Positions 3,001 through 35,123 of a stretch of DNA of 64,000 nucleotides are shown here, in pieces. The translations under genes and the position numbers were made by a program. The stretch covers positions 174,048-238,047 of IMG/VR virus record IMGVR_UViG_3300024350_000252; one strand, given 5' to 3'. The notes under the pieces were generated by a model. It made no database searches and was not told the DNA's origin. It saw only the letters and a program-made list of their open reading frames with translations. Position 1 is the stretch's first letter, and the number at the start of each line of letters is the position of its first letter.

Positions 3001-6000
3001 AAGATCGCTCTTGTGGCTAAAGAATCATTCGCAGATATCACAGTTACTGGTAGCACTATCAGTGGTAACACTTTGACTACTACTGCCGCAGAACAAGATA
3101 GATTGTATGCTAACATGCCATTGTATCTTAGCGCAGCTATTGGTGGGTTGAGTGCTAACTCTTTATATTATGTGGTTGGTTCTAGTATCGCTACACCCGG
3201 AACTACTTTCCAAGTTTCAACAGCACCGAGCGGATCTGCTGCTACGATAACAGCTACAACAACAGGACAAAACGTCACATTATATCAAGCAGGTTGGGAA
3301 GGAGCTATCAACGGTACCACTATCACATCACCGGATCCTTCTACATTATATTTGATCGAACCGAGAGTAACATTTGCTGCTCCAGGATTTAAACAAAACG
3401 CTACAGGCACACTACCGACCGTAGCTGTTGGATATAAAGATGGTGTGTTTAGTCAGACAAGATCTACTCATACAGGAGTGTCAGCGAGCGGTGGCGCTGG
3501 TTCAAGCGCAACCTTCAACATTACTAGAGTAGGATTGGTTTATACTGTAACATTAAACAACGGTGGTACGGGCTATGCTGTGGGAAATACTCTAACTATT
3601 TTAGGAACCAGTGTCGACGGTGCTACTCCAAGGAATGACATCACGATAACAGTTACAAAAGTTACAAGTCCTACAGGAGTTATCAGTGCGTTCAGCTCTA
3701 CTGGTTTAGGTAGAGGTGGACAGTTCTTTGCTTTACCAAACAGTGGAGCAACAGGTGCATATTCAAGGGATGGCAGTACATGGACATCTACTACTATCAC
3801 TAACCAATCTTGGGGAACAGTAGCTACTGGTACTATTAGTAACGTGGATTATGTACAAATATTGCCAGGTAGTGGATCGGCTAATTTCCAATACAGCACC
3901 AATGGAGGACAAACGTGGACAAGTTCTACGCTGCCAACTACACAATCATGGACCAGTTCCGCATTTGGTAATGGTGTATTCATGGCAGTGTCCAGCACAT
4001 CTAATACACCTATAACATCATCAAATGGTACGAGCTGGGCTGTTACAGCCGGAAACCTTGGCGCTTTTACTAATTTAGTAGGAGTTGCTTACGGATTGGG
4101 TAGATTTATGGTATTGCCAGGATCAGCAGCTAACACAACAGCATCATACAGTCTCAATAACGGCACTACATTTGTGGCTACGACATTACCTTCCAGCCAG
4201 ACATGGTCTGGTATAGCATATGGTAATGGAAGATTTGTAGCCATAGCGTCAACTAATAGAGCAGGTGCTATCAGCATAGATGGTGTAAACTGGACAGCAG
4301 TAACACTACCGAATGGAACTATGACCAAGATCAGATATGCTCAAGGTCTGTTTATGATGATAACTAGCGGTAGTGCTAATACTGTATGGACATCGCAAGA
4401 TGGTATCAATTGGACTAACAGGACATTTGCTACCAGCGATACGAGAGCATTCCCATTCTTTGGTGATCCAAACAATGTACCAAGCTGGATAGTTCTACCG
4501 TCGAGTGCTACTACTACAGGTATCATAGCAAAAACTGGTGCTACTGCTACAGGCAGAGTTTTAGTAACTAACAACAGTATTTCTCAAACTAGAATCGTTG
4601 AACCTGGTTCGGGATATCCGTTCGGATCTGTAACTAACGTAGGACCTACAACAACTATCACAGTAACCAGCGTATCAGGAACTACTATAACCACTTCAAC
4701 AAACTTGACTACTGCTGGTATACTATCAGATCAACCTATAGTATTCAGCGCAGGATTAGGCAATATCGTCGGCGGCAGTACATATTATGTGTTAACGGCT
4801 AGTGGCACATCGATGACTATTAGCTCTAGCTTACAAGGAACTGCTTTCACTGTAGGCACAGCATCTGGTACTATCACTGGTACTACTGCTAGCGTGATCA
4901 AAGTTGATCAAACTGATAATCTAGTCAATGGTCAACCTGTGAACTTTACCAATTTAGCTGCGGTTGGCTTGTCTACTAATAAAGCATACTATGTGATCAG
5001 CGGTAGTATCACTACTACCAGCTTCAGAGTTTCACAAAATACAGTATCTTCGACAGCGGCAACGCTGACCACACCAGCATCTAGTTTGGTGAATGCTTTT
5101 TATAACGCAGGCGGTGCTATAACTATAACTGATCCGAACCGTGTGTTTGCTGCCCCTATACAAGTAAGAGCTGGATCTAGTGTATTGGCTAATCCTACAT
5201 TTACCAATAGAGGTACTTTATGGACTACAGCTACAACAACAATATCAGGCGACGGTGTTGGAGATATATTCCAACCAGGTCAATATATCTCTATCAAGAA
5301 CATTAGCTCACTGCCAACAGTTGGATCGAATGTGGAATTCGCTTCATTACCGGGACAGTATTTCAAACTAGTTACTACCAGAAACTTGATAGGAACTGGT
5401 CCATATACTGCTACATTCCAGATCAGTCCGTTAATGTCCGTGACAGATTCTCCACCAGATGGCGATGCTATCACTGTAAGAATCAGATATAGCCAAGTGC
5501 GTCTAACTGGACATGATTTTTTGAGCATCGGTACTGGTAACTTTACCAATACAAATTATCCAGGAATACCACTGATCGCTTCTGATTCGGCCAAGCAGAC
5601 CAAAGAGTCCGCCGGAGGTCGCGTGTTCTTTACCAGCACTGACCAAGACGGTAACTTCAACGTTGGTAACTTGTTCTCGGTACAACAGGCTACAGGTACT
5701 GCTACCCTAAATGCTAACGCATTCAATCTAGCAGGACTACAGAGCTTGAGCTTAGGCTCAGTTAACGTGGGAGGTAGCGCAGGCGCTACTATCACTGAAT
5801 TCAGTACAGATCCATATTTCACAGCTAATAGCGATGCTATATTGCCTACTCAACGAGCTATCAAGGCATATGTAGCTTCACAAATTGGTTCTGGATCCAG
5901 TACTTTGAACGTAAATACACTTACTGCTGGTTCGATCTTTGTAAGCGGAAACACCATTACAACCACTACAAACCTCGAAATCAAAGTAACTACAAAATTG

Positions 6001-6057
6001 AATTTCATCAAGGGTGTGGATGGTTATCCAGTGGCCTTGAATTTGTTCTTAACATAA
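1..6057 (+). CDS. Giant tail fibre/virion protein, 5'-truncated: pectin-lyase-like beta-helix, Asp-box propeller and Ig-like repeats
   Basis: Frame 1 is open from base 1, so the TTG at 52 is not the true start. Thr/Gly/Ser-rich. Motifs: YYVATSGTD..GATLDKPWKTIRYAC and KTGVYYETLPIVVP..IVGDELRS (beta-helix); six SxD/NGxxW Asp-boxes; C-terminal SDAILPTQRAIKAYV typical of T4-like structural proteins. Confidence 0.85.
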   Translation, partial: VTPAAQIIISSSYNGSPLTLTTASGSMGVSAGETYFVGQAIRFSGTTFGNIQTGSTPKQTYWIYSVDGLNTLKISTTQYGSPVSTTATGTNGQSTITVTSLTGIALGFQVTGNGIGSGATVVSIVGYVVTLSQPNTSNITTGTGAITFSSYFVPQTQTGSMTAEIVAEPPNDTFWGRLNSGIKWTNSWVTDIDYFLGDAVRYGPNSYICIQQHHSLTSNRPDNDVTGTFWNLLANGQESSVLTTQGDLVYFGGSGPTRLPIGQDGQVLTVNGNTLAPNWKFWGSIDQVYYVATSGTDSAYPIYGATLDKPWKTIRYACEQILAGPRNPNAAYLINVNRQFIQRETVNWINYQIANNISPFTTGFTYDQTKCERDTGYVIDALVWDLTHGGNVRSRAAALSYVGGTYTLLSSQKTQTNAALNYAINNVLVAAVLANAAPFQNYQVLNGVAVGSRINQVINTNYTSETVSSDITALLKIITDAITAGVSTNIPAQVQPNYTILAKTGVYYETLPIVVPAFTAIVGDELRSTNIRPAASQVAAGDVTYSLAALAYIKTIISNVVTGTTVTTNQITYSQDKTLPLATGTEGTTVQNLVQNIIDYINFYINSTGSAPAMTGTNTPASTYDPYAAARLLELNRNFIVAQTNAYIAATYPAYSYNVASCSRDVNRYIDALKYDLVYTGNYKTLTYAKLYVNAVTGSLLQNMFLVRNACGLRNCTVQGLTGTLGSANAYGTKRPSAGAYVSLDPGYGPNDSDAWVTTRSTYVQNVTTFGTAAIGLKIDGNLHNGGNKSVVANDFTQVISDGIGVWCTNNGLTELVSVFSYYGHMGYLAEAGGKIRATNGNSSYGDYGTVSEGVDATEVPITAQIDNRASAAQVGLTVQNGNAIQRLEFTNAGINYNNSATFTFNGAGINAAAVFDETRDNAIFEARQLQLAADGSDGMYGGSSYYTAQNVAQAGGLYQITLAATDSQTSSGYLGMRIVTVSGTGAAQQAKIINYNAGNKIALVAKESFADITVTGSTISGNTLTTTAAEQDRLYANMPLYLSAAIGGLSANSLYYVVGSSIATPGTTFQVSTAPSGSAATITATTTGQNVTLYQAGWEGAINGTTITSPDPSTLYLIEPRVTFAAPGFKQNATGTLPTVAVGYKDGVFSQTRSTHTGVSASGGAGSSATFNITRVGLVYTVTLNNGGTGYAVGNTLTILGTSVDGATPRNDITITVTKVTSPTGVISAFSSTGLGRGGQFFALPNSGATGAYSRDGSTWTSTTITNQSWGTVATGTISNVDYVQILPGSGSANFQYSTNGGQTWTSSTLPTTQSWTSSAFGNGVFMAVSSTSNTPITSSNGTSWAVTAGNLGAFTNLVGVAYGLGRFMVLPGSAANTTASYSLNNGTTFVATTLPSSQTWSGIAYGNGRFVAIASTNRAGAISIDGVNWTAVTLPNGTMTKIRYAQGLFMMITSGSANTVWTSQDGINWTNRTFATSDTRAFPFFGDPNNVPSWIVLPSSATTTGIIAKTGATATGRVLVTNNSISQTRIVEPGSGYPFGSVTNVGPTTTITVTSVSGTTITTSTNLTTAGILSDQPIVFSAGLGNIVGGSTYYVLTASGTSMTISSSLQGTAFTVGTASGTITGTTASVIKVDQTDNLVNGQPVNFTNLAAVGLSTNKAYYVISGSITTTSFRVSQNTVSSTAATLTTPASSLVNAFYNAGGAITITDPNRVFAAPIQVRAGSSVLANPTFTNRGTLWTTATTTISGDGVGDIFQPGQYISIKNISSLPTVGSNVEFASLPGQYFKLVTTRNLIGTGPYTATFQISPLMSVTDSPPDGDAITVRIRYSQVRLTGHDFLSIGTGNFTNTNYPGIPLIASDSAKQTKESAGGRVFFTSTDQDGNFNVGNLFSVQQATGTATLNANAFNLAGLQSLSLGSVNVGGSAGATITEFSTDPYFTANSDAILPTQRAIKAYVASQIGSGSSTLNVNTLTAGSIFVSGNTITTTTNLEIKVTTKLNFIKGVDGYPVALNLFLT

Positions 6058-6070
6058 CGGAGAAAAATAA

Positions 6071-6394
6071 ATGGCAACAGGAGTTTTGGGCACATACGAT
6101 CATACCGCAGGAGCTTGGTTTGCTCTATATACGGTCCCAGCCACTACATTTTCGGTGGTCAGCTTGTCAATGTGTAACAGAAGCAATCAAGCTGTGAACG
6201 TAAGAGTAGCAGTTTCTACAAGTTCAGTTAGCCCTGCTAACGGCGAAATCATCGAATTTGATACAGAAGTATTAGGAAAAGGTGTGCTAGAAAGGACCGG
6301 TATCGTGATGGATGCCGGTAAAGTGCTTCTAGTTTACTCAAATGCTGCGGGCGTTAGCTCGGTAGCATTTGGAATCGAAACATCAACTGTATAA
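6071..6394 (+). CDS. Small virion structural protein (107 aa)
   Basis: SD GGAG; beta-rich LYTVPATTFSVVSLSMCNR..EIIEFDTEV pattern seen beside T4-like fibre genes. Confidence 0.65.
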   Translation: MATGVLGTYDHTAGAWFALYTVPATTFSVVSLSMCNRSNQAVNVRVAVSTSSVSPANGEIIEFDTEVLGKGVLERTGIVMDAGKVLLVYSNAAGVSSVAFGIETSTV

Positions 6395-6420
6395 TAAATA
6401 TAGCATCAGGGGAATAAACA

Positions 6421-6753
6421 ATGGGAAGATATCTTACAACTACAGGAACAGCAGGCAATACGGTCAGAGAGATCTCAGGAGCCTACTCTGCAGTAGTCAA
6501 CGACAGAATTTTAGCTAATACTGCTAGTAGCGGTTTTACTATAACACTGCCTGCTAACAGCACATTATTTTTGAATGATACTATTCAGATCATTGACGTA
6601 GCAGGAAACGCAGCTATTAACAACATCACTATCGCTAGAAACAGCTCTAAGATCAACAATATCGCAGACGATTTCGTGATTGACGTTAACTATGCTGTGA
6701 TCACGTTGATCTATACAGGATCAACATATGGTTGGATCGTAGCCAACGCTTAA
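6421..6753 (+). CDS. Tail-fibre-associated protein (T4 gp34-like module, 110 aa)
   Basis: FTITLPAN..DTIQIIDVAGNAAINNITIARN..ITLIYTGSTYGW motif; ATAAATA late promoter at 6394-6400. Confidence 0.7.
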   Translation: MGRYLTTTGTAGNTVREISGAYSAVVNDRILANTASSGFTITLPANSTLFLNDTIQIIDVAGNAAINNITIARNSSKINNIADDFVIDVNYAVITLIYTGSTYGWIVANA

Positions 6754-6771
6754 TGAAGGATAAAGACGGGT

Positions 6772-7743
6772 ATGCCAACCTCGCTTAAAGCAACTAACGG
6801 TTTTAAAAGTCAGGCTTTCTGGAATCAGGAAACTAATCTAGAAAGAGGGACTATACATGTTTACACCCCAGGTAACGACTTCCAAAGTTTCCCCTGCTGC
6901 GGATGTTTCGTCGCACCTAGCTGTGGTACAGCAGTCATAGAAATCTGGGGAGCTGGCGGAAGCGGTTCTCGTATGTGCTGCTGTGGTGGCGGCATGCCAG
7001 GAAATTCAGGTGCCTATGCCAAAAAGACTATCAGAATGGGCGCAGGCTGTTATATCTATTTCTATGTAGGCATGGCCTGCGGTAACGCAGACTCTTTATG
7101 TTATAGAGGCTGTTCAGAAGCTACCTGTCTATGTTGGTTTGGTAACCAAGGACTTAGTGGCTGTATGTGCGCACAAGGTGGACAGGGCGGTATCAGTTAC
7201 TGTTCTACAGGTACTTCTATGTACTGCTGCTATGCGGCCAATAGTTGGCCAACTACAAACTTAGGCAATGGTTGCGGAATCGTCTGTAATAATTGCTCAG
7301 GATCATATCAAGCATGTGCCTACGGTGGAGACGTTAACCTCTGTAGTAGGATTTCCTGCGTGGTCTATCTAGGCTGCTTGCCCAGCTGCGTATGTAACAT
7401 CAATTGGAGCATGGCTATCCCCGCAGGACAATTTTCAAAATGCGGAGGCTATGTCAGCTACACGACAGAAAATAACCAAGACTACGCTAACTGGGTCGGT
7501 GTAGGACAACATAATCATATCATGGCACTGAATGCTGCCAGTCGTTGGCCACAACAGGGTATGCCATGGGCATACTGCTGGGGGTTTGGCGGTGGTTGCG
7601 GCTGTTACGAAAACGAAGGCTGTACAGGATTTGTTCCACCAGGACATCCTGGAATGGGACCGCTTCCATGTCCAGATGTGAGAGATCATGCTAGAAAAGG
7701 CGGCAGTGGCATGGTAAGAATTAAATTTATACCGGGAACATAA
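6772..7743 (+). CDS. Cys/Gly-rich adhesin-like protein, paralogue 1
   Basis: EIWGAGGSG..GNSGAYAKK and terminal GGSGMVRIKF, a glycine-rich phage adhesin frame; about 33 Cys in 323 aa. Confidence 0.7.
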   Translation: MPTSLKATNGFKSQAFWNQETNLERGTIHVYTPGNDFQSFPCCGCFVAPSCGTAVIEIWGAGGSGSRMCCCGGGMPGNSGAYAKKTIRMGAGCYIYFYVGMACGNADSLCYRGCSEATCLCWFGNQGLSGCMCAQGGQGGISYCSTGTSMYCCYAANSWPTTNLGNGCGIVCNNCSGSYQACAYGGDVNLCSRISCVVYLGCLPSCVCNINWSMAIPAGQFSKCGGYVSYTTENNQDYANWVGVGQHNHIMALNAASRWPQQGMPWAYCWGFGGGCGCYENEGCTGFVPPGHPGMGPLPCPDVRDHARKGGSGMVRIKFIPGT

Positions 7744-7744
7744 G

Positions 7745-8725
7745 ATGCCAACTTCGATTAGAACATGGACACAAACTAGACTAAACTTCATCGCAGATAA
7801 TGAAGAAAACTTAGAACGAGGTTCGATCTATCTGTTCAGCGGTTCTGCTGAAAGAACGAATTTTAGTAACGGTGGTTTTTGCTGGGTAGCACCTGCTACC
7901 GGACAGGCTATCGTAGACATTTGGGGAGCTGGTGGTAGCGGTGCTCGTATGTGCTGCTGCGGTGGCGGTCTTCCGGGCAATCCAGGAGCATTTGCTAGAA
8001 AATGTCTATGTATACAGTCTGGCTGCTGGATCTGCGGATTTACTGGTATGAGCTGCGGCTCACCAGATCTTTGCTTTAGAGGTTGTTCGGAATATTCAGG
8101 TATCTGCTGGCAAGCTAGCGGTACAAACGGTTGTGTATGCGCCCAAGGTGGCCGCGGAGGCACTAGCTACTGTTCTACAGGAACTTCTCTCTATTGCTGT
8201 TTTACAGCTGGTAACTTCTGTACTACACTAATCAACGCTAACTGTGGTGTTGTCTGTAACTATGGTTCAGGCACAGCCAGCTGCTGCGCACAAGCATTCG
8301 GTGGCGACATTAACTGTTTTGGCGGTTTTAGTTGTGTACTTTTCGCAGGTTGTCAACCAAGTTGTCCATGTTCAACAATCTATCACATAGCTACACCTCC
8401 ATACTATTATTCAACATGCGGTGGAGTGATCACTTACACCTCTGAAGGTGATAGCGGAGCAGCTAACTGGTCGGGCGGTACATTGACAGGATACATACAC
8501 GGTATGTCAGTCATGGGTCGTCAACCACATCACGGTACACCTCCAGAGCAATCTTGCTGGACTGGCGGTCGTACATGCGGATGTTACGAAGGTCAAGGAT
8601 GTATTCCTTTTGTACCAGCAGGATTCCCAGGACCTGGTCCTTTGCCTTGCCCAGATGTTCGCGATATGGCATTCCGTGGCGGTCATGGTGCTGTAAGAAT
8701 CAAATTCATAGCCGCAACAGAATAA
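7745..8725 (+). CDS. Cys/Gly-rich adhesin-like protein, paralogue 2
   Basis: Same motifs as paralogue 1 (WGAGGSGARMCCCGGG, CSTGTSLYCC, PCPDVRD, GGHGAVRIKF); about 33 Cys. Confidence 0.7.
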   Translation: MPTSIRTWTQTRLNFIADNEENLERGSIYLFSGSAERTNFSNGGFCWVAPATGQAIVDIWGAGGSGARMCCCGGGLPGNPGAFARKCLCIQSGCWICGFTGMSCGSPDLCFRGCSEYSGICWQASGTNGCVCAQGGRGGTSYCSTGTSLYCCFTAGNFCTTLINANCGVVCNYGSGTASCCAQAFGGDINCFGGFSCVLFAGCQPSCPCSTIYHIATPPYYYSTCGGVITYTSEGDSGAANWSGGTLTGYIHGMSVMGRQPHHGTPPEQSCWTGGRTCGCYEGQGCIPFVPAGFPGPGPLPCPDVRDMAFRGGHGAVRIKFIAATE

Positions 8726-8737
8726 GGTGAAATAAGA

Positions 8738-9721
8738 ATGGCACAATCGCTTAATAGCTTAGTAAGATTAAAAACTCCAGATAGGAATGAAGATAACCTT
8801 GAATTAGGCCAGATCTTTGTGTTCAGTCCTGGCACCATGTATACCAACTTCTGTTATAACGGTGGTTCTGGTTTCTGTTGGAAAGCTCCAGGAACAGGTA
8901 CAGCAGTTATCGAAATGTGGGGAGCTGGTGGTAGCGGTGCTAAGATGTGCTGCTGCGGCGGCGGAACTCCAGGAAATGCAGGTGCTTATGTAAGAAAAAC
9001 TATTTCGGTTAACTCTAGCACATATGTTTGCGGTTGTACCGGATTTTCCTGTGGTAACTCAGACTCATTATGCTATAGAGGTTGCTCAGATCCTTCGGGA
9101 TTAAACTGGGTGAATGGTACTGGTGCGATAGGAGCTACCAGTGGCTGCTTATGTGCCCAAGGTGGTAACGGTGGCCTTAGCTGGTGTTCTACAGGTACTT
9201 CTATGTATTGTTGTATGGGGGCTAGCGGATGGTGTACCACTTATCTAGGTACAGGTTGCGGTGTGGTCTGTAATTACTGTAATGGTATGTGGATTGCCTG
9301 CGGGTTTGGTGGAGACATTAACTGCTGCGGTCGATTCAGCTGTATTACCTATTATGGTTGTCTACCTAGCTGTATTTGTTTGTTCCAATATCATATTGCT
9401 GTACCGGCTAATTTCTTCTCATGCGGTTGCGGTAGTATGGCTAATTTCACAACAGAAAATGATAATAGGCATTCTAACTGGTCAGGCCAAGGTGTTAACC
9501 AACAGATGAACGCATTAGGAGCATTGAGTAGATCGCCGAGACAAGGTATTCCGCAAAGCTACTGCTGGCGTTCAGATCGTAAGTGTGGATGTTATAATAT
9601 GCAGGGCTGTATGAACTATAACCCACCTGGTGTGGGCGGTGTCGGACCAGCTCCGTGCCCAGACGTCCGCGATCACGCTATGCGTGGTGGAATGGGCGCA
9701 GTGCGTATTAGATTCTTTTGA
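8738..9721 (+). CDS. Cys/Gly-rich adhesin-like protein, paralogue 3
   Basis: WGAGGSGAKMCCCGGG, CSTGTSMYCC, PCPDVRD, GGMGAVRIRF; about 33 Cys. Confidence 0.7.
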   Translation: MAQSLNSLVRLKTPDRNEDNLELGQIFVFSPGTMYTNFCYNGGSGFCWKAPGTGTAVIEMWGAGGSGAKMCCCGGGTPGNAGAYVRKTISVNSSTYVCGCTGFSCGNSDSLCYRGCSDPSGLNWVNGTGAIGATSGCLCAQGGNGGLSWCSTGTSMYCCMGASGWCTTYLGTGCGVVCNYCNGMWIACGFGGDINCCGRFSCITYYGCLPSCICLFQYHIAVPANFFSCGCGSMANFTTENDNRHSNWSGQGVNQQMNALGALSRSPRQGIPQSYCWRSDRKCGCYNMQGCMNYNPPGVGGVGPAPCPDVRDHAMRGGMGAVRIRFF

Positions 9722-9742
9722 TAAATAGTTTAGAGGATAAAA

Positions 9743-10393
9743 ATGAGAAAGTTATTTCAAATTACATTGCCCGACGAACCATACAAAACAGCCACTACTA
9801 AAAATCAAAAAGTAGACTGTATGTATGTGGGCCCACGATATATGGTACTTTGTATCGATAATACTACTGATTTAGTAAAATATGTAGGTAGACGTGCTGA
9901 CACGATCGAAGAAGCAGAATTAGATAATCACGTAGAAGATGATCATTATCATGTTTTGCTAGATGCTTCTGTGAATACATTTGAAGCAGCATATCTTACA
10001 GGACAGTACGAACACGGTGAGATAGAGAATTATACCGAAACGTTACCTACAAAAAACGCAGCAGGTGAGTTCGAAACTTATACATATCACTATGATGATT
10101 ACAGAGGTATTATAGGACAGATTTATTGGAATCAGGTTCTTTATTACAATCCTTCAAATAAAACTTTCAAAGAACCCGCAAGAAGAGAACATGCTACTGA
10201 CTGGGATCAAGTAGTAAAAACTACTAAAGATGGGGCTGCTGAAATACGTAAAATGTTAGAAGCTAATGATTATTTTCCAGCTCAATTAGCAGTTATCAAT
10301 GAATATCTAGATTGGGTTGATACTTTTGAAGAAAAGTATGCTGATGTAGATCATTGGAAAGTTCCATTTCCACCATATCCAAACATGGCTTAA
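9743..10393 (+). CDS. Hypothetical protein, possible tail-fibre assembly chaperone
   Basis: Acidic 216 aa directly after the adhesin triplet; C-terminal HWKVPFPPYP resembles the W..P end of fibre chaperones; GATAAATA at 9720-9727 and SD GAGG. Confidence 0.5.
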   Translation: MRKLFQITLPDEPYKTATTKNQKVDCMYVGPRYMVLCIDNTTDLVKYVGRRADTIEEAELDNHVEDDHYHVLLDASVNTFEAAYLTGQYEHGEIENYTETLPTKNAAGEFETYTYHYDDYRGIIGQIYWNQVLYYNPSNKTFKEPARREHATDWDQVVKTTKDGAAEIRKMLEANDYFPAQLAVINEYLDWVDTFEEKYADVDHWKVPFPPYPNMA

Positions 10394-10474
10394 TTTAGTC
10401 TGGACCAGATCTAGGTCGACTGTTACCGTATAGCTAATATATAGTAGCACTCGACCTATATTCTTGGAGACTAA

Positions 10475-11431
10475 ATGGAACAGCAACAACCAACACAGCG
10501 ATCAAAAGCCTTTTTCTTAAATGGCGGCGCTGGCAGAGTTCTATGCTCTATCCCGGCATTAGAAAAATACGAAGAAGAATCAGGGGATAAAGATTTCATC
10601 ATAGTGTGCGAAGGTGGTACGGAAGTGTTCAAAGGACATCCTACACTAGACAGCAGAACATATGACAATTGGCACAAGAATCTTTTTGTAGAAAAAATCA
10701 AAGATCGCGATTGTGTAACACCCGAGCCTTATAGAGTTTGGGAATATTACAATCAAAAATGCGATCTAGCACAGGCATTTGATATCGAAATCAATAGAAA
10801 AGGCATTAGAGAATTACCTAAACCTAATCTAAGATTGAGCAAAGACGAATTGTTAGTAGGTAGACAGCTAATCGCCGACGTCAAGAAAAAAATCAAGAAA
10901 GAAAAAATCATAGTTTTCCAACCATTTGGCCGAGGCATAGACTATGTCGATGGTTCTTTTGTAGATCGTACTAACAGAAGCTTTGAATTTAAAGATGTAA
11001 AATCAATCATACGAAAACTTCAAGAAGCCAATTACGGTGTCGTAATGATGGGAGAAATGCGGCTCGATCTTACCAGCGAAAAACTAAAAGATGATGTAGC
11101 AGCACCAGAAAACACTACCATAAGACAGTGGGCAGCTATCATCAAATACGCAGATCATTTCTTGGGCTGTGACAGTGTGGGTCAACACCTAGCCTATATC
11201 GTAGGCAAACAATCTACTGTAGTATTCGGATCTACATATCCAGTTAACGTGTCTTACCCTAATTGTAAGTACATGAATCTTCTAGATATGGCTGAAGAAA
11301 TAAGAGAATATAGTCCTATCAGGATTACACTAGACGAACGTATTGATAGAAAACTAGAAGGAGTTATGTCCATGACTCCGGAAATTGTTGATTATGTAGT
11401 GAATGCTGTTTTAGGGAAGAAACAAAAATGA
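10475..11431 (+). CDS. GT9-like (heptosyltransferase-type, GT-B fold) glycosyltransferase
   Basis: N-terminal NGGAGRVLCSIPAL and C-terminal AAIIKYADHFLGCDSVGQHLA..STVVFGST match the GT9 pattern. Confidence 0.7.
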   Translation: MEQQQPTQRSKAFFLNGGAGRVLCSIPALEKYEEESGDKDFIIVCEGGTEVFKGHPTLDSRTYDNWHKNLFVEKIKDRDCVTPEPYRVWEYYNQKCDLAQAFDIEINRKGIRELPKPNLRLSKDELLVGRQLIADVKKKIKKEKIIVFQPFGRGIDYVDGSFVDRTNRSFEFKDVKSIIRKLQEANYGVVMMGEMRLDLTSEKLKDDVAAPENTTIRQWAAIIKYADHFLGCDSVGQHLAYIVGKQSTVVFGSTYPVNVSYPNCKYMNLLDMAEEIREYSPIRITLDERIDRKLEGVMSMTPEIVDYVVNAVLGKKQK

Positions 11432-13242
11432 GTGAAAGCAAGAATCCAATGTTAAACACTGGCTGGATCGCAGCCATAGCTAGAGGTCATAATTCAGGTA
11501 TCTGTCTATTCAAAGACGGAGAGATCGTTTTTTCTGCTGAAGAAGAAAGATTTACCAGACAGAAATACGACGGCGGTCCGTATGCTTCGATGATGAAAAT
11601 CAAAGAATACACAGACAAAATCGATTATCTAGTAGTAGCACACACACAAAAATTAAATGAAACTGCGGGTCGTGTTGACTATTCTGGTGATGATGTATAC
11701 ACAGGATTAGCTCGTAAGATGAATCTTATTGATCGAAAAGCTGATTTACATAATCATCCTCAAGTAATTGACCTTAGTTTTATGCATCATAAGCTACACG
11801 CTGCTTGTGCGTTTTATCGTTCGGGATTTGATGATGCTGTAGCATTGATTGTAGATGGTGCCGGTACTTTCATCCAGATGTCTTATGCTAACCAACCTAT
11901 ATGGGTATGGGAAGTAGAAAGTATCGTAGACTGTTCATATCCATCAAAGTTCAAAACTTTGTACAAGCATTATGGTACTAGAGAGCCTATTGCTGGTGCT
12001 ATCGAAACTAGCATTCCGTCTGATCAGTACGGTGAAGTAAATGATTTTCATGCTGCCGTATTATCAGACAGAGCAGGTATCGTTAAGACTTACGAAGCAG
12101 TCACAGAATATTGTGGGTTCAGTGCTATCGAAGCAGGCAAGACTATGGGATTGTTCCCATACGGACAGAAAAACGATAAGATTCCTCCATTGTTTGATTT
12201 TACATCTAAGGTACCCTTATCAAACAGAAATGTTATAGTTCCAGCATATCCTTCGTCTGCTAGAGTCAACGCACAACTATTTGATTATTTGGACGAAGAA
12301 ATTCCAGAAGGAGTAGATCCTACTAAATTACAAAGTCGTAGAGATTTGGCTTATGCTTGTCAAACACAGACTCAAGACCAAGTAGTGAGATTGATACGAA
12401 AAGCTGTAGAAATTAGCGGCAAGAAGAAAGTAGTGATCAGCGGTGGCTATGGTCTTAACTGTGTGGCCAATTATCATTATCTAGAAGCATTGAAAGACGG
12501 GGGTATCGAAATTTATGTAGAACCTATCTCTAACGATGCCGGAACAGCTATGGGAGCAGGACTGATGTTTTGGCATGCCATGACTGACAACACAGACATA
12601 CAGAAACTAGATACCCTTTACCTCGGACCTAAGTACGAATATACACAGGAAGAAATTGCGGAAAAGGTCAAGTACGCAGGTGGCGAGTTGACAGACGCTA
12701 CCAATGAACAAGTAGTAGAACTGCTACGTTCTAAGAATATCGTGACGATCTTCCAAGGTAGATCAGAAAACGGTCCGAGGGCCCTAGGCAATAGAAGTGT
12801 TTTATTTGATCCTACATTTCCAGATGGAAAGGATTTTGTAAACACTGTCAAACGTCGAGAATATTTCCGTCCTTTTGCGGGCAGCATTATACATGATGTT
12901 GTACATGATTGGTTTGATCTGCGCGGCATGGATGAAAGTCCTCACATGATGTATGCTGTAAACTGTAAGCCCGGAATCGCAGAAAAGATACCCAGCATCA
13001 TACACGTAGACGGTACCTGTAGAATACAGACTGTAAAACGTGAGCAAAATCCTCATTATTATGATTTGATCAAGGCTTTTTATACAGCTACAGGAATTCC
13101 TATCCTGTTTAATACCAGCTTTAATTTGGGCGGTGATCCGCTAGTAGAAACACTAGATGATGCTATAGATACCTTGATACGCAGCGATATAGAGTATCTG
13201 TACCTGCCAGAATACGGCAAACTGATCAAAATAGCCAACTGA
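11428..13242 (+). CDS. Carbamoyltransferase, NodU/CmcH/TobZ family (full length, Kae1-like plus YrdC-like domains)
   Basis: EEERFTR, HHKLHAACAF, VDGAG, GKTMGL, GGYGLNCVAN, NDAGTAMGA, GPRALGNRS, KRREYFRPFA, HVDGTCRIQTV, NTSFN; ATGA overlap with the GT gene. Confidence 0.95.
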   Translation: MSESKNPMLNTGWIAAIARGHNSGICLFKDGEIVFSAEEERFTRQKYDGGPYASMMKIKEYTDKIDYLVVAHTQKLNETAGRVDYSGDDVYTGLARKMNLIDRKADLHNHPQVIDLSFMHHKLHAACAFYRSGFDDAVALIVDGAGTFIQMSYANQPIWVWEVESIVDCSYPSKFKTLYKHYGTREPIAGAIETSIPSDQYGEVNDFHAAVLSDRAGIVKTYEAVTEYCGFSAIEAGKTMGLFPYGQKNDKIPPLFDFTSKVPLSNRNVIVPAYPSSARVNAQLFDYLDEEIPEGVDPTKLQSRRDLAYACQTQTQDQVVRLIRKAVEISGKKKVVISGGYGLNCVANYHYLEALKDGGIEIYVEPISNDAGTAMGAGLMFWHAMTDNTDIQKLDTLYLGPKYEYTQEEIAEKVKYAGGELTDATNEQVVELLRSKNIVTIFQGRSENGPRALGNRSVLFDPTFPDGKDFVNTVKRREYFRPFAGSIIHDVVHDWFDLRGMDESPHMMYAVNCKPGIAEKIPSIIHVDGTCRIQTVKREQNPHYYDLIKAFYTATGIPILFNTSFNLGGDPLVETLDDAIDTLIRSDIEYLYLPEYGKLIKIAN

Positions 13243-13267
13243 AAAAAGCCCCGCAAGGGGCTTTTTT
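13242..13267. terminator. Bidirectional rho-independent terminator
   Basis: AAAAAAGCCCC-GCAA-GGGGCTTTTTT. Confidence 0.9.
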
Positions 13268-13311
13268 ATTATGTCCGAAATCAGTTAAATACATAATACA
13301 AGAGAGTGACC

Positions 13312-14859
13312 ATGACTGATTTCAACAAGTTTTTTAACATAGACGTAAAGAACACATTAGGGTTAAAAAACGGGGTGAACTTTAACTATAAAGGGCCCTG
13401 GGTACAGGTCTATGAAAATACAGAACTAGATCGTTGGTATGTTGGTGATTTTGCCAGCGCCAATTATCATATTTCTATCGAATTCAACTCTAACAAAAAA
13501 GAAACATTATCAGTTTTAGTAGTTGCCCGCCCAGGGTATGCCAACTATACAGTTTACGGGCGTGTGGCTATCGACGATGAATTAGTTGATATATCTGCGG
13601 TGGTTAATAATAACCATCTATCTTTGATATTGAATCCAAAAGTAGCAGCATACAAAGGTATGCGAGCAATATTTACAGCCACATATGCTGGTACGTTGAC
13701 CGCACTATCTATACCTGCTACCCCGACATTTTTAGTCCCAGATACTAGTCCAAATTCAGGCAGCGGAACTCCTGGTACCGGCAGTTCGGCTATAGATCTA
13801 ACCAGCATCACTACAGATGTAGTACCTTTAGATACCGGAGTTAAAGACCTAGGCAAAACAGGAAAACGCTGGAGAGATCTTTTCATCAGCGGAAATTTAA
13901 ACATCAATGGCGCTATCATTGGTGCTTCTAACAATGCTGTCGATTTACCAACAGGTAGCACTATCGGCGGATCTACGTTAAAATCTTTTTCTACGGTTTC
14001 GGTAGCAGGACAAAACAGTATAACAACTTCTTTAGTAGGTGACAGTTTTACTATAGCAGCAGGAACTGGTATTTCTTTAACCACCGATTCTATTAATAAA
14101 GTATTAACTATAACCAACACAGGATCCGGCAGCAGCAGTGGTGGAACTACAGTTTCTGCGTCAGGTTTTGGCATCATAGCGGTTTCTGGACAGAACAATG
14201 TGTTGGCTACTAGATCGACAGACTCAGTACAGTTCATAGCCGGTAGTGGTATGACTATTACCACTAACCCTACGAACAAAACGATAACTTTTGTGTCATC
14301 GGGCGGAAGTGGTGGCAGTGGCGGAACAGCAACACAGGCCATAATCAATGAAATCACGACAGGTGAATATCCGATGGTGCTAGCTGCCGGTATCGATCCT
14401 TTGTCTGGCAAGGCTCTTTATGCTAACACAAACTATAAGCTCAATATCGATACCGGCGTATTAAGTGTATCGTCTACTAGTTCTCGATGGGCAGACTTAG
14501 CAGAAAATTATCTAGCTGATCGAGACTATGCTCCGGGTACCGTTGTAGAATTTGGTGGACAATTAGAAATTACCCAAGCTGGCGTAGTATCAAAAAAGAT
14601 AGCAGGAATCATATCAACTAGACCGGCACACCTCATGAATGGAGAATTGAAAGGCGAGTATGTAAAACCTGTAGCACTAGCAGGAAGAGTTCCGTGTAAA
14701 GTAACAGGTAAGGTTAAAAAAGGTGACATGATGGTCAGTGCCGGGGGCGGAAAAGCCAAGGCATCTTCTAATCCCGAAATAGGCTCAGTTATCGGAAAAG
14801 CATTAGAAGATTTTGATGGGGTTGACGGTACGATAGAAGTCGTAGTCGGTAGAATTTGA
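13312..14859 (+). CDS. Tail fibre/spike protein with C-terminal Peptidase-G2-like intramolecular chaperone domain
   Basis: WADLAENY..PGTVVEFGG..AGIIST.PAHLMN..VALAGRVPCKVTG..IGKALEDF; two SGQN..DSxxFxAGxGxxxTT repeats; ATG at 13312 preferred over GTG at 13306. Confidence 0.8.
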   Translation: MTDFNKFFNIDVKNTLGLKNGVNFNYKGPWVQVYENTELDRWYVGDFASANYHISIEFNSNKKETLSVLVVARPGYANYTVYGRVAIDDELVDISAVVNNNHLSLILNPKVAAYKGMRAIFTATYAGTLTALSIPATPTFLVPDTSPNSGSGTPGTGSSAIDLTSITTDVVPLDTGVKDLGKTGKRWRDLFISGNLNINGAIIGASNNAVDLPTGSTIGGSTLKSFSTVSVAGQNSITTSLVGDSFTIAAGTGISLTTDSINKVLTITNTGSGSSSGGTTVSASGFGIIAVSGQNNVLATRSTDSVQFIAGSGMTITTNPTNKTITFVSSGGSGGSGGTATQAIINEITTGEYPMVLAAGIDPLSGKALYANTNYKLNIDTGVLSVSSTSSRWADLAENYLADRDYAPGTVVEFGGQLEITQAGVVSKKIAGIISTRPAHLMNGELKGEYVKPVALAGRVPCKVTGKVKKGDMMVSAGGGKAKASSNPEIGSVIGKALEDFDGVDGTIEVVVGRI

Positions 14860-14889
14860 TCAAATAAATATAGGGCTAGCGGGTAAAAA

Positions 14890-15438: not shown

Positions 15439-15445
15439 GTAAAAG

Positions 15446-21964: not shown

Positions 21965-22003
21965 ATCATTGTATCACTGAACTGGTCATCGATAATTACT
22001 AGC

Positions 22004-23278: not shown

Positions 23279-23660
23279 GATCACAGGAAAAGTAGATAAA
23301 GGTTGGGGCATGGAATTGATCTGGGCCTCAAATGATGAATATTGCGGAAAGATATTAGTATTCAATAACGCTGGTTCTAAGTTTTCGATGCATTTCCACA
23401 AAGACAAAGACGAAACTTGGTTTGTCAATCAGGGAAGATTTAAAGTGCGTTGGATAGATACTAAGACAGCAGTTTTATACGAAAAAGAACTTAACGAGGG
23501 AGATGTATGGCATAATCCTAGATTACAACCTCATCAGTTAGAAGCTATGGTTGGCAATTCATCTATCACTGAAGTAAGTACAGCCGACAGTCCAGATGAC
23601 AACTATCGTATTATACCCGGAGACAGTCAAGCTGAAATAATGCCCAAGGAAGAAAAATGA
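23271..23660 (+). CDS. Cupin protein (sugar-phosphate isomerase-like)
   Basis: KGWGMELIW..SMHFHKDKDETWFV..QPHQLEA..EVST cupin motifs; overlaps both neighbours. Confidence 0.8.
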   Translation: MDRITGKVDKGWGMELIWASNDEYCGKILVFNNAGSKFSMHFHKDKDETWFVNQGRFKVRWIDTKTAVLYEKELNEGDVWHNPRLQPHQLEAMVGNSSITEVSTADSPDDNYRIIPGDSQAEIMPKEEK

Positions 23661-27938: not shown

Positions 27939-27971
27939 AGTATTATATTTACCGCCACGATAAATAACAGT

Positions 27972-28736: not shown

Positions 28737-28743
28737 ACCACAC

Positions 28744-28772
28744 TTGACAGCAGCATAGACGACCTGTATTAT
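28744..28772 (+). promoter_or_regulatory. Sigma70-type promoter for the dNMP kinase
   Basis: TTGACA-17 nt-TATTAT. Confidence 0.75.
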
Positions 28773-28793
28773 ATACTTTAAACAGGGGGCTCT

Positions 28794-33229: not shown

Positions 33230-33230
33230 G

Positions 33231-35121: not shown

Positions 35122-35123
35122 TT

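What the first reader, a model, noticed from the sequence alone, without database searches (positions are those of the whole stretch)
6772..13242. Candidate virion-tailoring module: three Cys-rich adhesins, a chaperone, a GT9-like transferase and a carbamoyltransferase
Seen: six co-oriented genes packed between fibre genes and closed by one strong terminator (13242-13267), with the GT and carbamoyltransferase translationally coupled. Known: NodU/CmcH/TobZ enzymes O-carbamoylate sugars or hydroxyls; GT9-related Aah/TibC enzymes heptosylate adhesin proteins using ADP-heptose. Inference: this resembles a biosynthetic cassette whose scaffold is a structural protein, in which the adhesins or neighbouring Ser/Thr-rich fibres are glycosylated (possibly with heptose from hldE/hldD 9 kb away) and then carbamoylated. 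I am not aware of such a pathway being described for phage receptor-binding proteins.
Basis: partly seen in the sequence, partly recalled or inferred. Interest (0 to 1): 0.8.

Follow-up and report, generated by a model that had tools for sequence, protein, structure and literature searches.

The report
Phage adhesin genes with sugar-tailoring enzymes
A giant river phage carries three cysteine-rich tail-fibre tip proteins and their folding helper next to a heptose-type sugar transferase and a carbamoyl transferase; the same gene set recurs in all but one of the related phages that could be checked, including cultured ocean cyanophages, which suggests, but does not prove, that these phages put a modified sugar on their host-recognition proteins.

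Summary
Window 6772-13242 has six co-oriented genes:
- three paralogous proteins with 10% Cys and 17% Gly
- a 216-aa protein
- a GT9-like glycosyltransferase
- a NodU/TobZ-type carbamoyltransferase that overlaps the GT stop codon (ATGA)

A strong terminator follows at 13242-13267.

Structure prediction places the Cys-rich proteins with the Pam3 gp24 / gp38-type glycine-rich fibre adhesins. The 216-aa family is homologous to proteins carrying a tail-assembly-chaperone domain. The GT's nearest solved structures are all heptosyltransferases (WaaC, WaaF, TibC).

- CT lies next to GT in 71/71 testable loci.
- At least two Cys-rich genes lie within 9 kb of GT in 55/55 loci.
- GT and CT lie beside Cys-rich genes in 59/60 loci.
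- The linkage persists down to 36% GT identity, and in the cultured cyanophages P-SSM2, S-SSM7 and S-CAM1, where the ADP-heptose genes directly follow the CT.

The acceptor was not shown. Published work calls these "LPS genes", and host-envelope modification remains a serious rival. The GT also lacks the canonical GT9 catalytic Asp, which is an invariant Arg here.

Verdict: a real, conserved and largely undescribed adhesin-plus-tailoring module. Virion glycosylation is the best but unproven reading (about 0.45).

The parts
52..6057 (+). Long tail-fibre protein (2001 aa) that opens the host-recognition cluster
   Evidence: Matches the annotated tail fibre proteins of S-CAM1, P-SSM2 and S-SSM7 in several segments, up to 57% identity. 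The syntenic position is conserved in nearly all related loci.
6071..6394 (+). Small fibre-related protein (107 aa)
   Evidence: phrog_11338 'tail fiber protein'. 42% identical to S-CAM1 SXBG_00228. Always precedes the Cys-rich genes.
6421..6753 (+). Small fibre-related protein (110 aa), similar to the C-terminal ends of fibre proteins
   Evidence: Several PHROG tail and tail-fibre families. Matches the C-terminus of the S-SSM7 tail fibre.
6772..7743 (+). Cys/Gly-rich adhesin paralogue 1 (323 aa, 33 Cys)
   Evidence: AF2 model has pLDDT 84.7. The best PDB match is the Pam3 fibre gp24, 7ypx_A, E 3e-6, followed by Bxb1 tail-tip proteins and ALK/LTK glycine-rich domains. BFVD matches are the syntenic S-CAM3 and P-SSM2 proteins, Syn9 Gp38 and many 'glycine-rich domain' phage proteins.
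7745..8725 (+). Cys/Gly-rich adhesin paralogue 2 (326 aa, 33 Cys)
   Evidence: 50% identical to paralogue 1. phrog_4205.
8738..9721 (+). Cys/Gly-rich adhesin paralogue 3 (327 aa, 33 Cys)
   Evidence: 54% identical to paralogue 1. phrog_4205.
9743..10393 (+). Probable tail-fibre assembly chaperone (216 aa)
   Evidence: No direct Pfam hit. Its family profile (A3) aligns at 98.6% probability, E 1e-15, with L063:14667-15599, which carries Phage_tail_APC. One A3 member hits Phage_tail_APC at 2.5e-8. Its position after the adhesins mirrors Pam3 gp24 and gp25 (PMC9608196).
10393..10476 (+). Long intergenic hairpin that sequesters the GT ribosome-binding site; possible terminator, attenuator or RNA-processing site
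   Evidence: -34.6 kcal/mol, z -5.15. The same shape occurs with different sequence in five related loci, and an ordinary terminator takes its place in two others. RNA-library contigs break on both of its flanks in 3 of 4 runs.
10475..11431 (+). GT9-like GT-B glycosyltransferase (318 aa), presumed ADP-heptose dependent
   Evidence: AF2 pLDDT 90.8. The top 30 PDB matches are all GT9: 3tov, WaaF, WaaC and TibC. The donor motif D233-S-x-G-x-H238 aligns with WaaC D261-T-G-x-S-H. Pfam GT9 scores 20.7 bits, just under the 22-bit cut-off. The catalytic 'GD' of WaaC and WaaF is 'GR' here.
11428..13242 (+). NodU/CmcH/TobZ-family carbamoyltransferase (604 aa)
   Evidence: Carbam_trans_C 190.7 bits and Carbam_trans_N 93.6 bits. 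PDB relatives are 7xb6, TobZ, GdmN and the novobiocin carbamoyltransferase. 62% identical to the S-SSM7 'Nol-like carbamoyltransferase'.
13242..13267 (+). Intrinsic terminator
   Evidence: RNA-library contigs of runs X2-X4 end at 13227-13305.
13306..14859 (+). Fibre-like protein (517 aa)
   Evidence: A homologue sits downstream of the CT or the second GT in most related loci. Weak match to the P-SSM2 tail fiber protein PSSM2_315.
15446..21964 (+). Large virion structural protein (2172 aa)
   Evidence: 41% identical over about 1560 aa to the S-CAM1 'virion structural protein' SXBG_00214.
22004..23278 (+). Bifunctional HldE (heptose-7-P kinase and heptose-1-P adenylyltransferase)
   Evidence: PfkB plus CTP_transf_like. 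NCBIfam HldE 393.5 bits; rfaE_dom_II 182.7 bits, above its 181.5 cut-off.
23271..23660 (+). Small cupin. Its orthologues are annotated 'cysteine dioxygenase' in cultured cyanophages, which is not supported here
   Evidence: Only generic Cupin_1 and Cupin_2 hits and a weak WbuC-cupin hit. 36-38% identical to the cyanophage orthologues.
23657..24523 (+). HldD-like ADP-glycero-manno-heptose 6-epimerase
   Evidence: NCBIfam heptose_epim 258.2 bits, cut-off 274.6. Epimerase Pfam hit.

Best explanation
The region is the host-recognition cassette of a jumbo myovirus. Three paralogous gp38/Pam3-gp24-type adhesins form tail-fibre tips. Each has an N-terminal docking helix, a TNF-like sandwich and a glycine-rich tip domain that is unusually rich in cysteine. 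A Tfa-type chaperone encoded next to them folds them.

The GT-CT pair that follows is proposed to be a two-step tailoring unit for these adhesins, or for the neighbouring Ser/Thr-rich fibres. [quoted passage not shown] In step two the NodU/TobZ-type enzyme O-carbamoylates that heptose, using carbamoyl phosphate and ATP through carbamoyl-AMP. This is the reaction WapO is thought to perform on HepII of the Pseudomonas LPS core.

Shown here: the gene identities at fold or family level, the conserved linkage, and the presence of a donor pathway. Inferred: heptose as the sugar, the order of the two steps, and above all that the acceptor is a virion protein.
For: 1. Linkage. CT lies immediately downstream of GT in 71/71 testable loci. 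At least two Cys-rich ORFs lie within 9 kb of GT in 55/55 loci. GT and CT lie beside Cys-rich genes in 59/60 loci anchored on the adhesin. The trio persists at 36-43% GT identity (L172, L173, L175) and through inversions of the GT-CT block (L061, L063, L066, L070).

2. The module is shared by two phage lineages. The window's core genes are closest, at only about 34%, to PA5oct- and Phosso-like jumbo phages, and its neck protein is 26% identical to S-SSM7 gp13. The CT and GT are 62% and 54% identical to Kyanoviridae genes.

3. More distant members of the same GT family (phrog_8954) in a Vibrio N4-like podovirus and an Aeromonas myovirus also sit between tail-fibre, spike or sheath genes.

4. 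The family is essentially viral. In 185,579 species-representative genomes there are only 13 hits, and all are the same phage module binned into MAGs of unrelated phyla.

5. The hosts of the cultured carriers are cyanobacteria. Their LPS lacks heptose and Kdo (PMC4515613), so the canonical GT9 acceptor is absent. That also explains why the phage brings the ADP-heptose pathway.

6. TibC, a protein heptosyltransferase, is among the best structural matches.

7. Virion glycosylation by phage GTs encoded beside structural genes has a precedent in mycobacteriophages (Freeman et al. 2023, as cited in PMC12619734).

8. In three river metatranscriptome libraries, contigs over GT-CT have the same depth as contigs over the adhesin genes.
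Against: - No result identifies the acceptor.
- The GT lacks the GT9 catalytic Asp. Arg21 is conserved in 76 of 80 family representatives, so its chemistry may differ or it may act on something else.
- GT-CT is separated from the adhesin and chaperone genes by a strong hairpin or terminator, and a sigma70-like motif lies in that spacer. The enzymes may therefore be expressed on a different schedule from the structural genes.
- No T4-type late promoter lies nearby.
- Linkage inside a syntenic host-recognition cluster could also reflect co-inheritance, or a shared role in host-surface biology.
- Heptosyltransferase plus carbamoyltransferase is an LPS-core pairing in Pseudomonas (PMC8005017).
- No gmhA or gmhB was found in the window.
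- The loci surveyed are related to one another and are not independent samples.
Confidence: 0.45

Rival explanations
1. Host-envelope remodelling. GT and CT, fed by the phage's ADP-heptose genes, add carbamoyl-heptose to the infected cell's LPS core, another outer-membrane glycan or a surface protein. The effect would be to block superinfection by competing phages or to stop progeny re-adsorbing to lysed cells. On this reading the genes sit in the host-recognition cluster because both functions concern the receptor.
For: - This is the published reading: 'LPS genes' in P-SSM2, S-SSM7 and S-SM2 (PMC3037559), and glycosyltransferases in the host-recognition cluster of pelagimyophages read as surface modification (PMC7029224).
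- GT9 enzymes with known function are mostly LPS heptosyltransferases.
- The Pseudomonas core carries 7-O-carbamoyl-HepII made by the NodU-like WapO (PMC8005017).
- GT-CT is set apart from the structural genes by a hairpin or terminator.
Against: - Cyanobacterial LPS lacks Kdo and heptose (PMC4515613), so the usual acceptor is missing in the hosts of the cultured carriers.
- The catalytic Asp used by WaaC and WaaF on Kdo2-lipid A is absent.
- The family is not found in cellular LPS loci.
- The linkage is specifically to the Cys-rich adhesins across deep divergence and rearrangements.
- Distant homologues in Vibrio and Aeromonas phages also lie in tail modules.
Confidence: 0.3
2. Nucleic-acid modification. 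The carbamoyltransferase, possibly together with the GT, modifies phage DNA or nucleotides to evade restriction, as the phage 5-hydroxymethylcytosine carbamoyltransferase does.
For: A phage enzyme of the same superfamily makes 5-carbamoyloxymethylcytosine in DNA (PMC8670742). GT-B enzymes glycosylate DNA in T-even phages (established knowledge). A second ORF with only the carbamoyltransferase N-terminal domain lies next to the replicative helicase at 59339-60301.
Against: The DNA-modifying carbamoyltransferases co-occur with thymidylate-synthase homologues and deaminases; those on unmodified contigs sat next to glycosyltransferases (PMC8670742). Here the neighbours are always the GT and fibre genes. 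No thymidylate-synthase-like gene was found among the window ORFs scanned. ADP-heptose as a DNA-sugar donor has no precedent that I know of.
Confidence: 0.07
3. The GT9-like protein is not a transferase for virion or host glycans. It would be a non-catalytic or differently catalytic assembly factor for the Cys-rich adhesins, with the carbamoyltransferase acting on a small molecule or on a protein side chain directly.
For: The canonical catalytic Asp is replaced by Arg. The profile does not reach classical GT9 proteins by sequence (only 638 clusters at E<=0.001). Distant homologues in Vibrio and Aeromonas phages lack the CT and the heptose genes.
Against: The donor-binding motif and many other polar residues are conserved in 75-80 of 80 family representatives: E84, Y86, Q149, D164, R168, S169, R217, D233, S234, H238, T254, N258 and R283. 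That pattern is typical of an active enzyme. The dedicated ADP-heptose genes in the same cluster argue for a sugar donor.
Confidence: 0.1

Closest known systems
Pam3 gp24 fibre with its chaperone gp25, and the T-even/S16 gp38 adhesin (glycine-rich-domain receptor-binding proteins)
   Same: The predicted fold is the best PDB match (7ypx_A, 7yfw_a), and Syn9 Gp38 is among the BFVD matches. Both have an N-terminal helix followed by a beta-rich body and a Gly-rich region. In both, a Tfa-type chaperone gene lies directly downstream (PMC9608196).
   Different: These proteins have 10% cysteine, with CC and CCC runs inside the Gly-rich motifs (for example WGAGGSGxxMCCCGGGxPG). They come as two to four tandem paralogues. 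They have no Pfam hit. They are always accompanied by GT and CT genes, which Pam3 and S16 lack.
GT9 LPS heptosyltransferases WaaC and WaaF
   Same: GT-B fold and top structural matches. The C-terminal D-S/T-G-x-x-H donor motif and the Arg/Lys at the WaaC K192 position are conserved. ADP-heptose biosynthesis genes lie in the same cluster.
   Different: The N-terminal catalytic 'GD' is 'GR'. The Pfam score is below threshold for the window protein. A profile search does not reach the classical family. The genes are found only in phage fibre modules.
TibC/Aah bacterial autotransporter heptosyltransferases (BAHT)
   Same: GT9-like fold, and among the top ten structural matches (4rap, 4rb4). This is the precedent for ADP-heptose transfer to an adhesin protein.
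   Different: No conserved Cys cluster that could form TibC's iron site. The protein is shorter: 318 aa against TibC chains of about 371-390 residues. The putative acceptors are phage fibre adhesins, not autotransporter beta-helices. No sequence-level match was found.
WapO (PA5005) with WaaC/WaaF in the Pseudomonas LPS inner core
   Same: The same pairing of heptosyltransferase and NodU-family carbamoyltransferase, giving 7-O-carbamoyl-heptose (PMC8005017).
   Different: That system works on Kdo2-lipid A in a cellular LPS locus. This one is viral and embedded among fibre genes. Its cultured carriers infect cyanobacteria, whose LPS lacks heptose and Kdo (PMC4515613).
Virion glycosylation in mycobacteriophages (Freeman et al. 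2023) and chloroviruses
   Same: Virus-encoded glycosyltransferases next to structural genes modify virion proteins.
   Different: The GT families, sugars and targets differ (capsid and tail tube there). No carbamoylation and no virus-encoded ADP-heptose pathway is involved. For the present module, modification of the virion is only inferred.
The 'LPS gene cluster' and 'Nol-like carbamoyltransferase' of P-SSM2, S-SSM7 and S-CAM1
   Same: Orthologous, syntenic genes: PSSM2_302-313, SSSM7_114-133 and SXBG_00228-00216.
   Different: In those genomes the Cys-rich genes and the GT are annotated as hypothetical. The cluster was discussed only as LPS genes or stuffer DNA (PMC3037559). The link to gp38-like adhesins and a chaperone was not made in the papers I could read.

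Membership tests
GT9 heptosyltransferase (CAZy GT9 / Pfam PF01075) | GT-B fold with GT9 enzymes as the nearest structures | tested here: met
   The top 30 Foldseek PDB matches are all GT9: 3tov, 1psw, 2gt1, 2h1h, 4rap, 4rb4 and 6dfe. E values run from 1e-11 to 7e-8.
GT9 heptosyltransferase (CAZy GT9 / Pfam PF01075) | Pfam PF01075 score above the gathering threshold | tested here: not met
   20.7 bits against a 22-bit cut-off. 30 of 38 close relatives match at E<=0.1, best 6.5e-7. The PDB profile search found no GT9 chain.
GT9 heptosyltransferase (CAZy GT9 / Pfam PF01075) | C-terminal nucleotide-sugar motif (WaaC D261-T-G-x-S-H266) and the phosphate-binding basic residue (WaaC K192) | tested here: met
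   hhalign and MAFFT align D233-S-V-G-Q-H238 with the WaaC and WaaF motif, and R168 with K192. D233, S234, H238 and R168 are conserved in 78-79 of 80 family representatives.
GT9 heptosyltransferase (CAZy GT9 / Pfam PF01075) | N-terminal catalytic base Asp (WaaC and WaaF D13, 'GD' at the start of helix 1) | tested here: not met
   'GDVLHTLPAL' of WaaC aligns with 'GRVLCSIPAL'. R21 is invariant in A2 and present in 76/80 representatives. The AF2 model's beta1-loop-alpha1 topology agrees with this alignment. The alignment is sequence-based, not a superposition.
GT9 heptosyltransferase (CAZy GT9 / Pfam PF01075) | Uses ADP-heptose as donor | not testable with these tools
   Context only. hldE and hldD are in the window, and hldE, gmhA and hldD directly follow the CT in cyanophage and metagenomic relatives.
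BAHT protein heptosyltransferases (TibC/Aah) | Iron-binding Cys cluster and the extra C-terminal region that supports the dodecamer | tested here: not met
   Only C96 and C232 are invariant in A2. In the wider family those columns are mostly I, H or V. The protein is 318 aa, against TibC chains of about 371-390 residues.
BAHT protein heptosyltransferases (TibC/Aah) | Transfers heptose to Ser of an adhesin protein | not testable with these tools
There is only fold similarity to TibC and adjacency to adhesin genes.
NodU/CmcH/TobZ O-carbamoyltransferases | Kae1-like N-terminal domain plus YrdC-like C-terminal domain, both above the Pfam thresholds | tested here: met
   Carbam_trans_N 93.6 bits (cut-off 24) and Carbam_trans_C 190.7 bits (cut-off 27). 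phmmer hits to 7xb6, TobZ, GdmN and the novobiocin carbamoyltransferase at E 1e-57 to 1e-43.
NodU/CmcH/TobZ O-carbamoyltransferases | Carbamoylates a hydroxyl of a sugar or polyketide, using carbamoyl phosphate and ATP | not testable with these tools
   Inferred from family membership only.
Phage 5hmC DNA carbamoyltransferase (MetaGPA) | Co-occurs within a few kb with a thymidylate-synthase homologue (dCMP hydroxymethylase) and deaminases | tested here: not met
   In the surveyed loci the neighbours are the GT, fibre genes, a second GT or the hldE genes. No thymidylate-synthase-like Pfam hit appeared among the window ORFs scanned. The criterion comes from PMC8670742.
Glycine-rich-domain fibre adhesins (Pam3 gp24 / gp38 type) | TNF-like plus glycine-rich-domain fold | tested here: met
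   Foldseek: 7ypx_A E 3e-6, 7yfw_a, Bxb1 tail-tip chains and ALK/LTK glycine-rich domains. 140 BFVD matches at E<=1e-3, dominated by glycine-rich-domain phage proteins and including Syn9 Gp38. TM-scores are modest (0.42-0.59).
Glycine-rich-domain fibre adhesins (Pam3 gp24 / gp38 type) | Dedicated Tfa-type chaperone encoded directly downstream | tested here: inconclusive
   The 216-aa protein has no Pfam hit of its own. Its family is homologous to a member carrying Phage_tail_APC. The Atlas search gives only weak leads to Phage_tail_APC and Caudo_TAP.
Glycine-rich-domain fibre adhesins (Pam3 gp24 / gp38 type) | Present in the virion at the fibre tip | not testable with these tools
   No proteome of a phage carrying the module was available. 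The S-SM1, S-PM2 and Syn9 proteomes were discussed in PMC3037559, but I did not test whether those phages carry the module.
[quoted passage not shown] | All four enzymes encoded | tested here: not met
   HldE: rfaE_dom_II is above its cut-off, but the kinase domain and the whole-protein model are below theirs. HldD scores 258 bits against a 274.6 cut-off. No gmhA was found by tblastn with three cyanophage GmhA queries. No GmhB was seen among the ORFs scanned. The window covers only 64 kb of a roughly 238-kb genome.

The most novel reading that the evidence does not exclude
The cysteines themselves are the acceptors. The GT9-like enzyme has swapped the general-base Asp for an invariant Arg, which would suit a thiolate nucleophile. 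It would S-heptosylate the Cys-rich adhesin tips. Alternatively or additionally, the carbamoyltransferase would S-carbamoylate them, as its superfamily relative HypF does to the HypE cysteine. Either would give phage receptor-binding proteins a thio-linked carbamoyl-heptose coat, a protein modification not known in any virus.
Probability: 0.07. Interest if true: 0.9.

Novelty: new variant of a known kind. Interest (0 to 1): 0.62.

Why it matters
If these enzymes decorate the adhesins or fibres, three things follow.

- Abundant marine and freshwater myoviruses, including model cyanophages, would carry glycosylated and carbamoylated host-recognition proteins.
- That would change how host range, receptor binding, virion stability and grazing or immune recognition of these phages are understood.
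- A gene set that has sat in the cyanophage literature for two decades as 'LPS genes' or 'stuffer' would be reassigned.

It would also extend protein heptosylation beyond the enterobacterial autotransporters. It would define a GT9-like clade with a different catalytic residue.

The question can be tested directly, because P-SSM2, S-SSM7 and S-CAM1 are in culture. If instead the genes remodel the host envelope, the strict coupling to a particular adhesin family would still be an interesting case of a receptor-binding and receptor-masking cassette.

Tried and rejected
- **DNA and protein searches of phage records.** Megablast of 6000-15500 against phage records found nothing. tblastn with Cys-rich protein 1 found nothing at 1e-5; the relationship to the cyanophage proteins only appeared with unfiltered blastp against the syntenic ORFs.
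- **Sequence-profile searches of the PDB.** Searches with the Cys-rich family, the GT family and the 216-aa family gave no meaningful hit. Fold comparison was needed.
- **Terminator scan.** The consensus terminator scan did not list the 13242-13267 hairpin. It was confirmed by folding.
- **Late promoter.** No T4-type TATAAATA motif lies near the module. There are only 3 in 64 kb, fewer than the chance expectation.
- **Expression class.** I looked for published expression classes of the P-SSM2 orthologues. The papers found report only marker genes, and no supplement was held.
- **Virion proteome.** The S-SCSM2R paper lists virion proteins only by figure, so it could not be used.
- **'Cysteine dioxygenase' annotation.** The annotation given to the cupin's orthologues is not supported. 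Only generic cupin hits were found.
- **gmhA.** Searched for in the window and not found.
- **Protein Atlas search of the 216-aa protein.** It gave only sub-threshold leads.
- **Read laying.** It returned assembled contigs, not reads. It cannot prove transcription or give strand or 5' ends. The breakpoints are suggestive only.
- My first adjacency count wrongly excluded overlapping GT and CT genes. Every one of the listed 'failures' has the CT starting inside the GT stop region, so the true figure is 71/71.
- **5hmC carbamoyltransferase comparison.** I did not compare the CT with the published 5hmC carbamoyltransferase sequence, because that would have meant typing a long sequence into a call.

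Full report
**What is there**

The window comes from a large T4-like phage. The same GT protein is encoded on IMG/VR contigs of 42-238 kb. River metatranscriptome libraries hold the stretch.

On the + strand the order is:
- a 2001-aa fibre protein (52-6057)
- two small fibre-related proteins (6071-6394 and 6421-6753)
- three paralogous proteins of 323-327 aa (6772-9721)
- a 216-aa protein (9743-10393)
- a 318-aa GT (10475-11431)
- a 604-aa carbamoyltransferase (11428-13242)
- a terminator
- more fibre and structural genes (13306-21964)
- hldE, a cupin and hldD (22004-24523)

Each of the three paralogues has 33 cysteines (10%) and about 17% glycine. Neighbouring proteins have 0-2% Cys. The paralogues are 50-54% identical to one another. 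GT and CT overlap by ATGA. The terminator folds at -17.2 kcal/mol, z -3.9.

**What the proteins are**

*Cys-rich proteins.* A 68-sequence alignment gave an AF2 model with pLDDT 84.7 and pTM 0.83.
- Its best PDB matches are the fibre gp24 of cyanophage Pam3, tail-tip proteins of mycobacteriophage Bxb1, and the glycine-rich domain of ALK/LTK.
- In BFVD the best matches are the syntenic S-CAM3 and P-SSM2 proteins. Many 'glycine-rich domain' phage proteins and Syn9 Gp38 follow.
- Pam3 gp24 has a docking helix, a TNF-like domain and a glycine-rich receptor-binding tip. It needs a Tfa-like chaperone, gp25, encoded next to it (PMC9608196).

*216-aa protein.* It has no Pfam hit. Its family profile aligns at 98.6% probability with a relative that carries a Phage_tail_APC domain, and one family member hits that domain at 2.5e-8. 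'Three adhesins and a chaperone' is thus well supported at fold and homology level.

*GT.* The model (pLDDT 90.8) has GT9 heptosyltransferases as its 30 best PDB matches. These include WaaC, WaaF and the protein heptosyltransferase TibC.
- The donor-side motif D233-S-x-G-x-H238 aligns with the WaaC D261 motif, and R168 aligns with K192.
- The Pfam GT9 score is just below threshold.
- The profile does not reach classical GT9 enzymes by sequence.
- The N-terminal catalytic 'GD' of WaaC and WaaF is 'GR'. Arg21 is conserved in 76 of 80 representatives of the wider family.

I therefore call it GT9-like, not a GT9 member.

*Carbamoyltransferase.* It is an unambiguous NodU/TobZ-family enzyme.

*Heptose genes.* HldE and HldD are supported by NCBIfam. 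No gmhA was found in the window.

**Linkage**

- In 80 viral loci found through the GT, the CT directly follows the GT in 71/71 testable cases. At least two Cys-rich ORFs lie within 9 kb in 55/55.
- In 76 loci found through the adhesin, GT and CT are present in 59/60 testable cases. The exception is L135.
- The order fibre, 107, 110, Cys-rich (two to four copies), chaperone, GT, CT is nearly universal.
- Variants add a second GT paralogue after the CT, or one or two unknown ORFs between GT and CT. Some add extra CT copies flanked by P4H-like 2OG-Fe(II) oxygenases.
- In several loci the GT-CT block is inverted but stays within 5 kb of the Cys-rich genes.
- The trio persists at 36-43% GT identity.
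- The cultured cyanophages P-SSM2, S-SSM7 and S-CAM1 have the same module. In P-SSM2 and S-CAM1, hldE (split in two), gmhA, the cupin and hldD come directly after the CT. In S-SSM7 several other genes lie between.

The window's core genes are only about 34% identical to their nearest relatives, the PA5oct- and Phosso-like jumbo phages. Its neck protein is 26% identical to S-SSM7 gp13. Its CT and GT are 62% and 54% identical to the cyanophage genes. The cassette therefore appears to be shared between lineages.

Distant members of the GT family in a Vibrio N4-like phage and an Aeromonas myovirus also sit among tail fibre and sheath genes. In 185,579 representative genomes the family turns up only 13 times. 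Every hit is this phage module binned into a MAG.

**Expression hints**

An 84-nt hairpin lies between the chaperone-like gene and the GT (10393-10476, -34.6 kcal/mol, z -5.2). It pairs with the GT's Shine-Dalgarno region. Five related loci have a hairpin of the same shape but different sequence. Two others have an ordinary terminator in that position.

In three of four river RNA libraries:
- assembled contigs stop at 10398-10405
- they restart at 10463-10477
- they stop again at 13227-13305, the terminator
- depths over the adhesin genes and over GT-CT are similar, and depth over the next fibre gene is much lower

These are contigs, not reads, and DNA carry-over cannot be excluded. They suggest that GT-CT forms a discrete RNA unit bounded by the hairpin and the terminator.

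**How it most likely works**

The best-supported reading is that the GT transfers heptose from phage-made ADP-heptose to the adhesins or neighbouring fibres, and the CT then O-carbamoylates that heptose. The arguments for it are:
- the strict and deep linkage to one adhesin family
- the viral-only distribution of the GT family
- the repeated tail-module context in unrelated phages
- the absence of heptose and Kdo from cyanobacterial LPS (PMC4515613)
- the TibC and mycobacteriophage precedents

The pairing of heptosyltransferase and carbamoyltransferase, giving carbamoyl-heptose, is known from the Pseudomonas LPS core (PMC8005017). That supports the proposed chemistry, but it supports the main rival equally.

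The main rival is remodelling of the host envelope, which is the reading in the literature (PMC3037559, PMC7029224). DNA modification is a lesser rival. Phage carbamoyltransferases that act on 5hmC are known, but they co-occur with thymidylate-synthase homologues, which are absent here (PMC8670742). The missing catalytic Asp leaves room for unusual chemistry or for a non-canonical role.

I put virion tailoring at about 0.45, host-envelope remodelling at 0.30, a non-canonical role at 0.10 and DNA modification at 0.07.

**Novelty**

The genes themselves have been in databases since the P-SSM2 genome was published, annotated as hypothetical proteins, 'Nol-like carbamoyltransferase' and LPS genes. 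Three things appear undescribed in the papers I could search:
- the Cys-rich genes are gp38/Pam3-type adhesins with a chaperone
- the GT-CT-heptose genes are bound to them across lineages
- the GT clade has Arg in place of the catalytic Asp

If the modification is real, it would be a new variant of two known things: virion glycosylation and protein heptosylation.

Noticed in passing
window 10393-10476: An 84-nt intergenic hairpin (-34.6 kcal/mol, z -5.15) pairs with the GT's Shine-Dalgarno region. The same shape occurs with different sequence in L007, L010, L018, L024 and L033. An ordinary GC-hairpin plus T-run terminator takes its place in L019 and S-CAM1. RNA-library contigs break on both flanks in 3 of 4 runs.
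   Followed up: partly
window 59339-60301: A second ORF has only the carbamoyltransferase N-terminal (Kae1-like) domain. It overlaps the start of the DnaB-like replicative helicase (60294-61736). It is 24% identical to the S-SSM7 'nol' 369-aa gene. It may point to a nucleic-acid-related role distinct from the fibre-module CT.
   Followed up: partly
window 44539-49107: A further sugar-related cluster contains a fusion of a cytidylyltransferase and a mannose-6-P-isomerase-type cupin (44539-45297) and an FkbM-type methyltransferase (48394-49107), among unannotated ORFs.
   Followed up: no
window 35504-35944: A TnsA-like endonuclease ORF lies about 1.6 kb upstream of the terminase gene, among unannotated ORFs. 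It may be a homing or mobile endonuclease.
   Followed up: no
L037:12736-13686; L033:11080-11943; L063:11005-12828; L144:15580-16221 and 17930-18568: The enzyme complement varies in related loci. Some have a second GT paralogue after the CT. Some have one or two unknown 290-315-aa ORFs between GT and CT, with no Pfam hit. Some have extra CT copies flanked by prolyl-hydroxylase-like 2OG-Fe(II) oxygenases, as in S-SSM7.
   Followed up: partly
L163-L175 (GTDB representative genomes): Thirteen MAGs carry this phage fibre module. They are labelled Chitinophagales, Methanobacteriota, Neomarinimicrobiota, Actinomycetota, Woesearchaeota and other taxa. Two of the contigs are 153 kb and 335 kb. These are almost certainly phage contigs mis-binned into cellular genomes.
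   Followed up: yes
L135 (IMGVR_UViG_3300021091_005821): This is the only locus where three Cys-rich genes and the chaperone-like gene are not followed by GT and CT within 6 kb. Small opposite-strand ORFs follow instead.
   Followed up: partly
window 25162-40842 versus 6000-24600: The core structural genes (gp15-like, and a 552-aa virion protein) are closest, at about 31-35%, to the Pseudomonas PA5oct and Sinorhizobium Phosso jumbo phages. The fibre, adhesin, GT and CT cassette is closest, at 41-62%, to Kyanoviridae. This suggests the host-recognition cassette was exchanged between lineages.
   Followed up: partly
window 8918-8996 and 9185-9207: RNA-library contigs show a 'goes back 996' joint and loose ends inside Cys-rich gene 3, whose loose sequence resembles the paralogues. 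The likely cause is assembler cross-joining between the tandem paralogues rather than a real rearrangement.
   Followed up: no
window 23271-23660: The orthologues of this small cupin are annotated 'cysteine dioxygenase' in P-SSM2, S-SSM7 and S-CAM1. Here it hits only generic cupin models and, weakly, the WbuC sugar-cluster cupin. It always travels with the heptose genes, so a sugar-modifying role seems more likely.
   Followed up: partly
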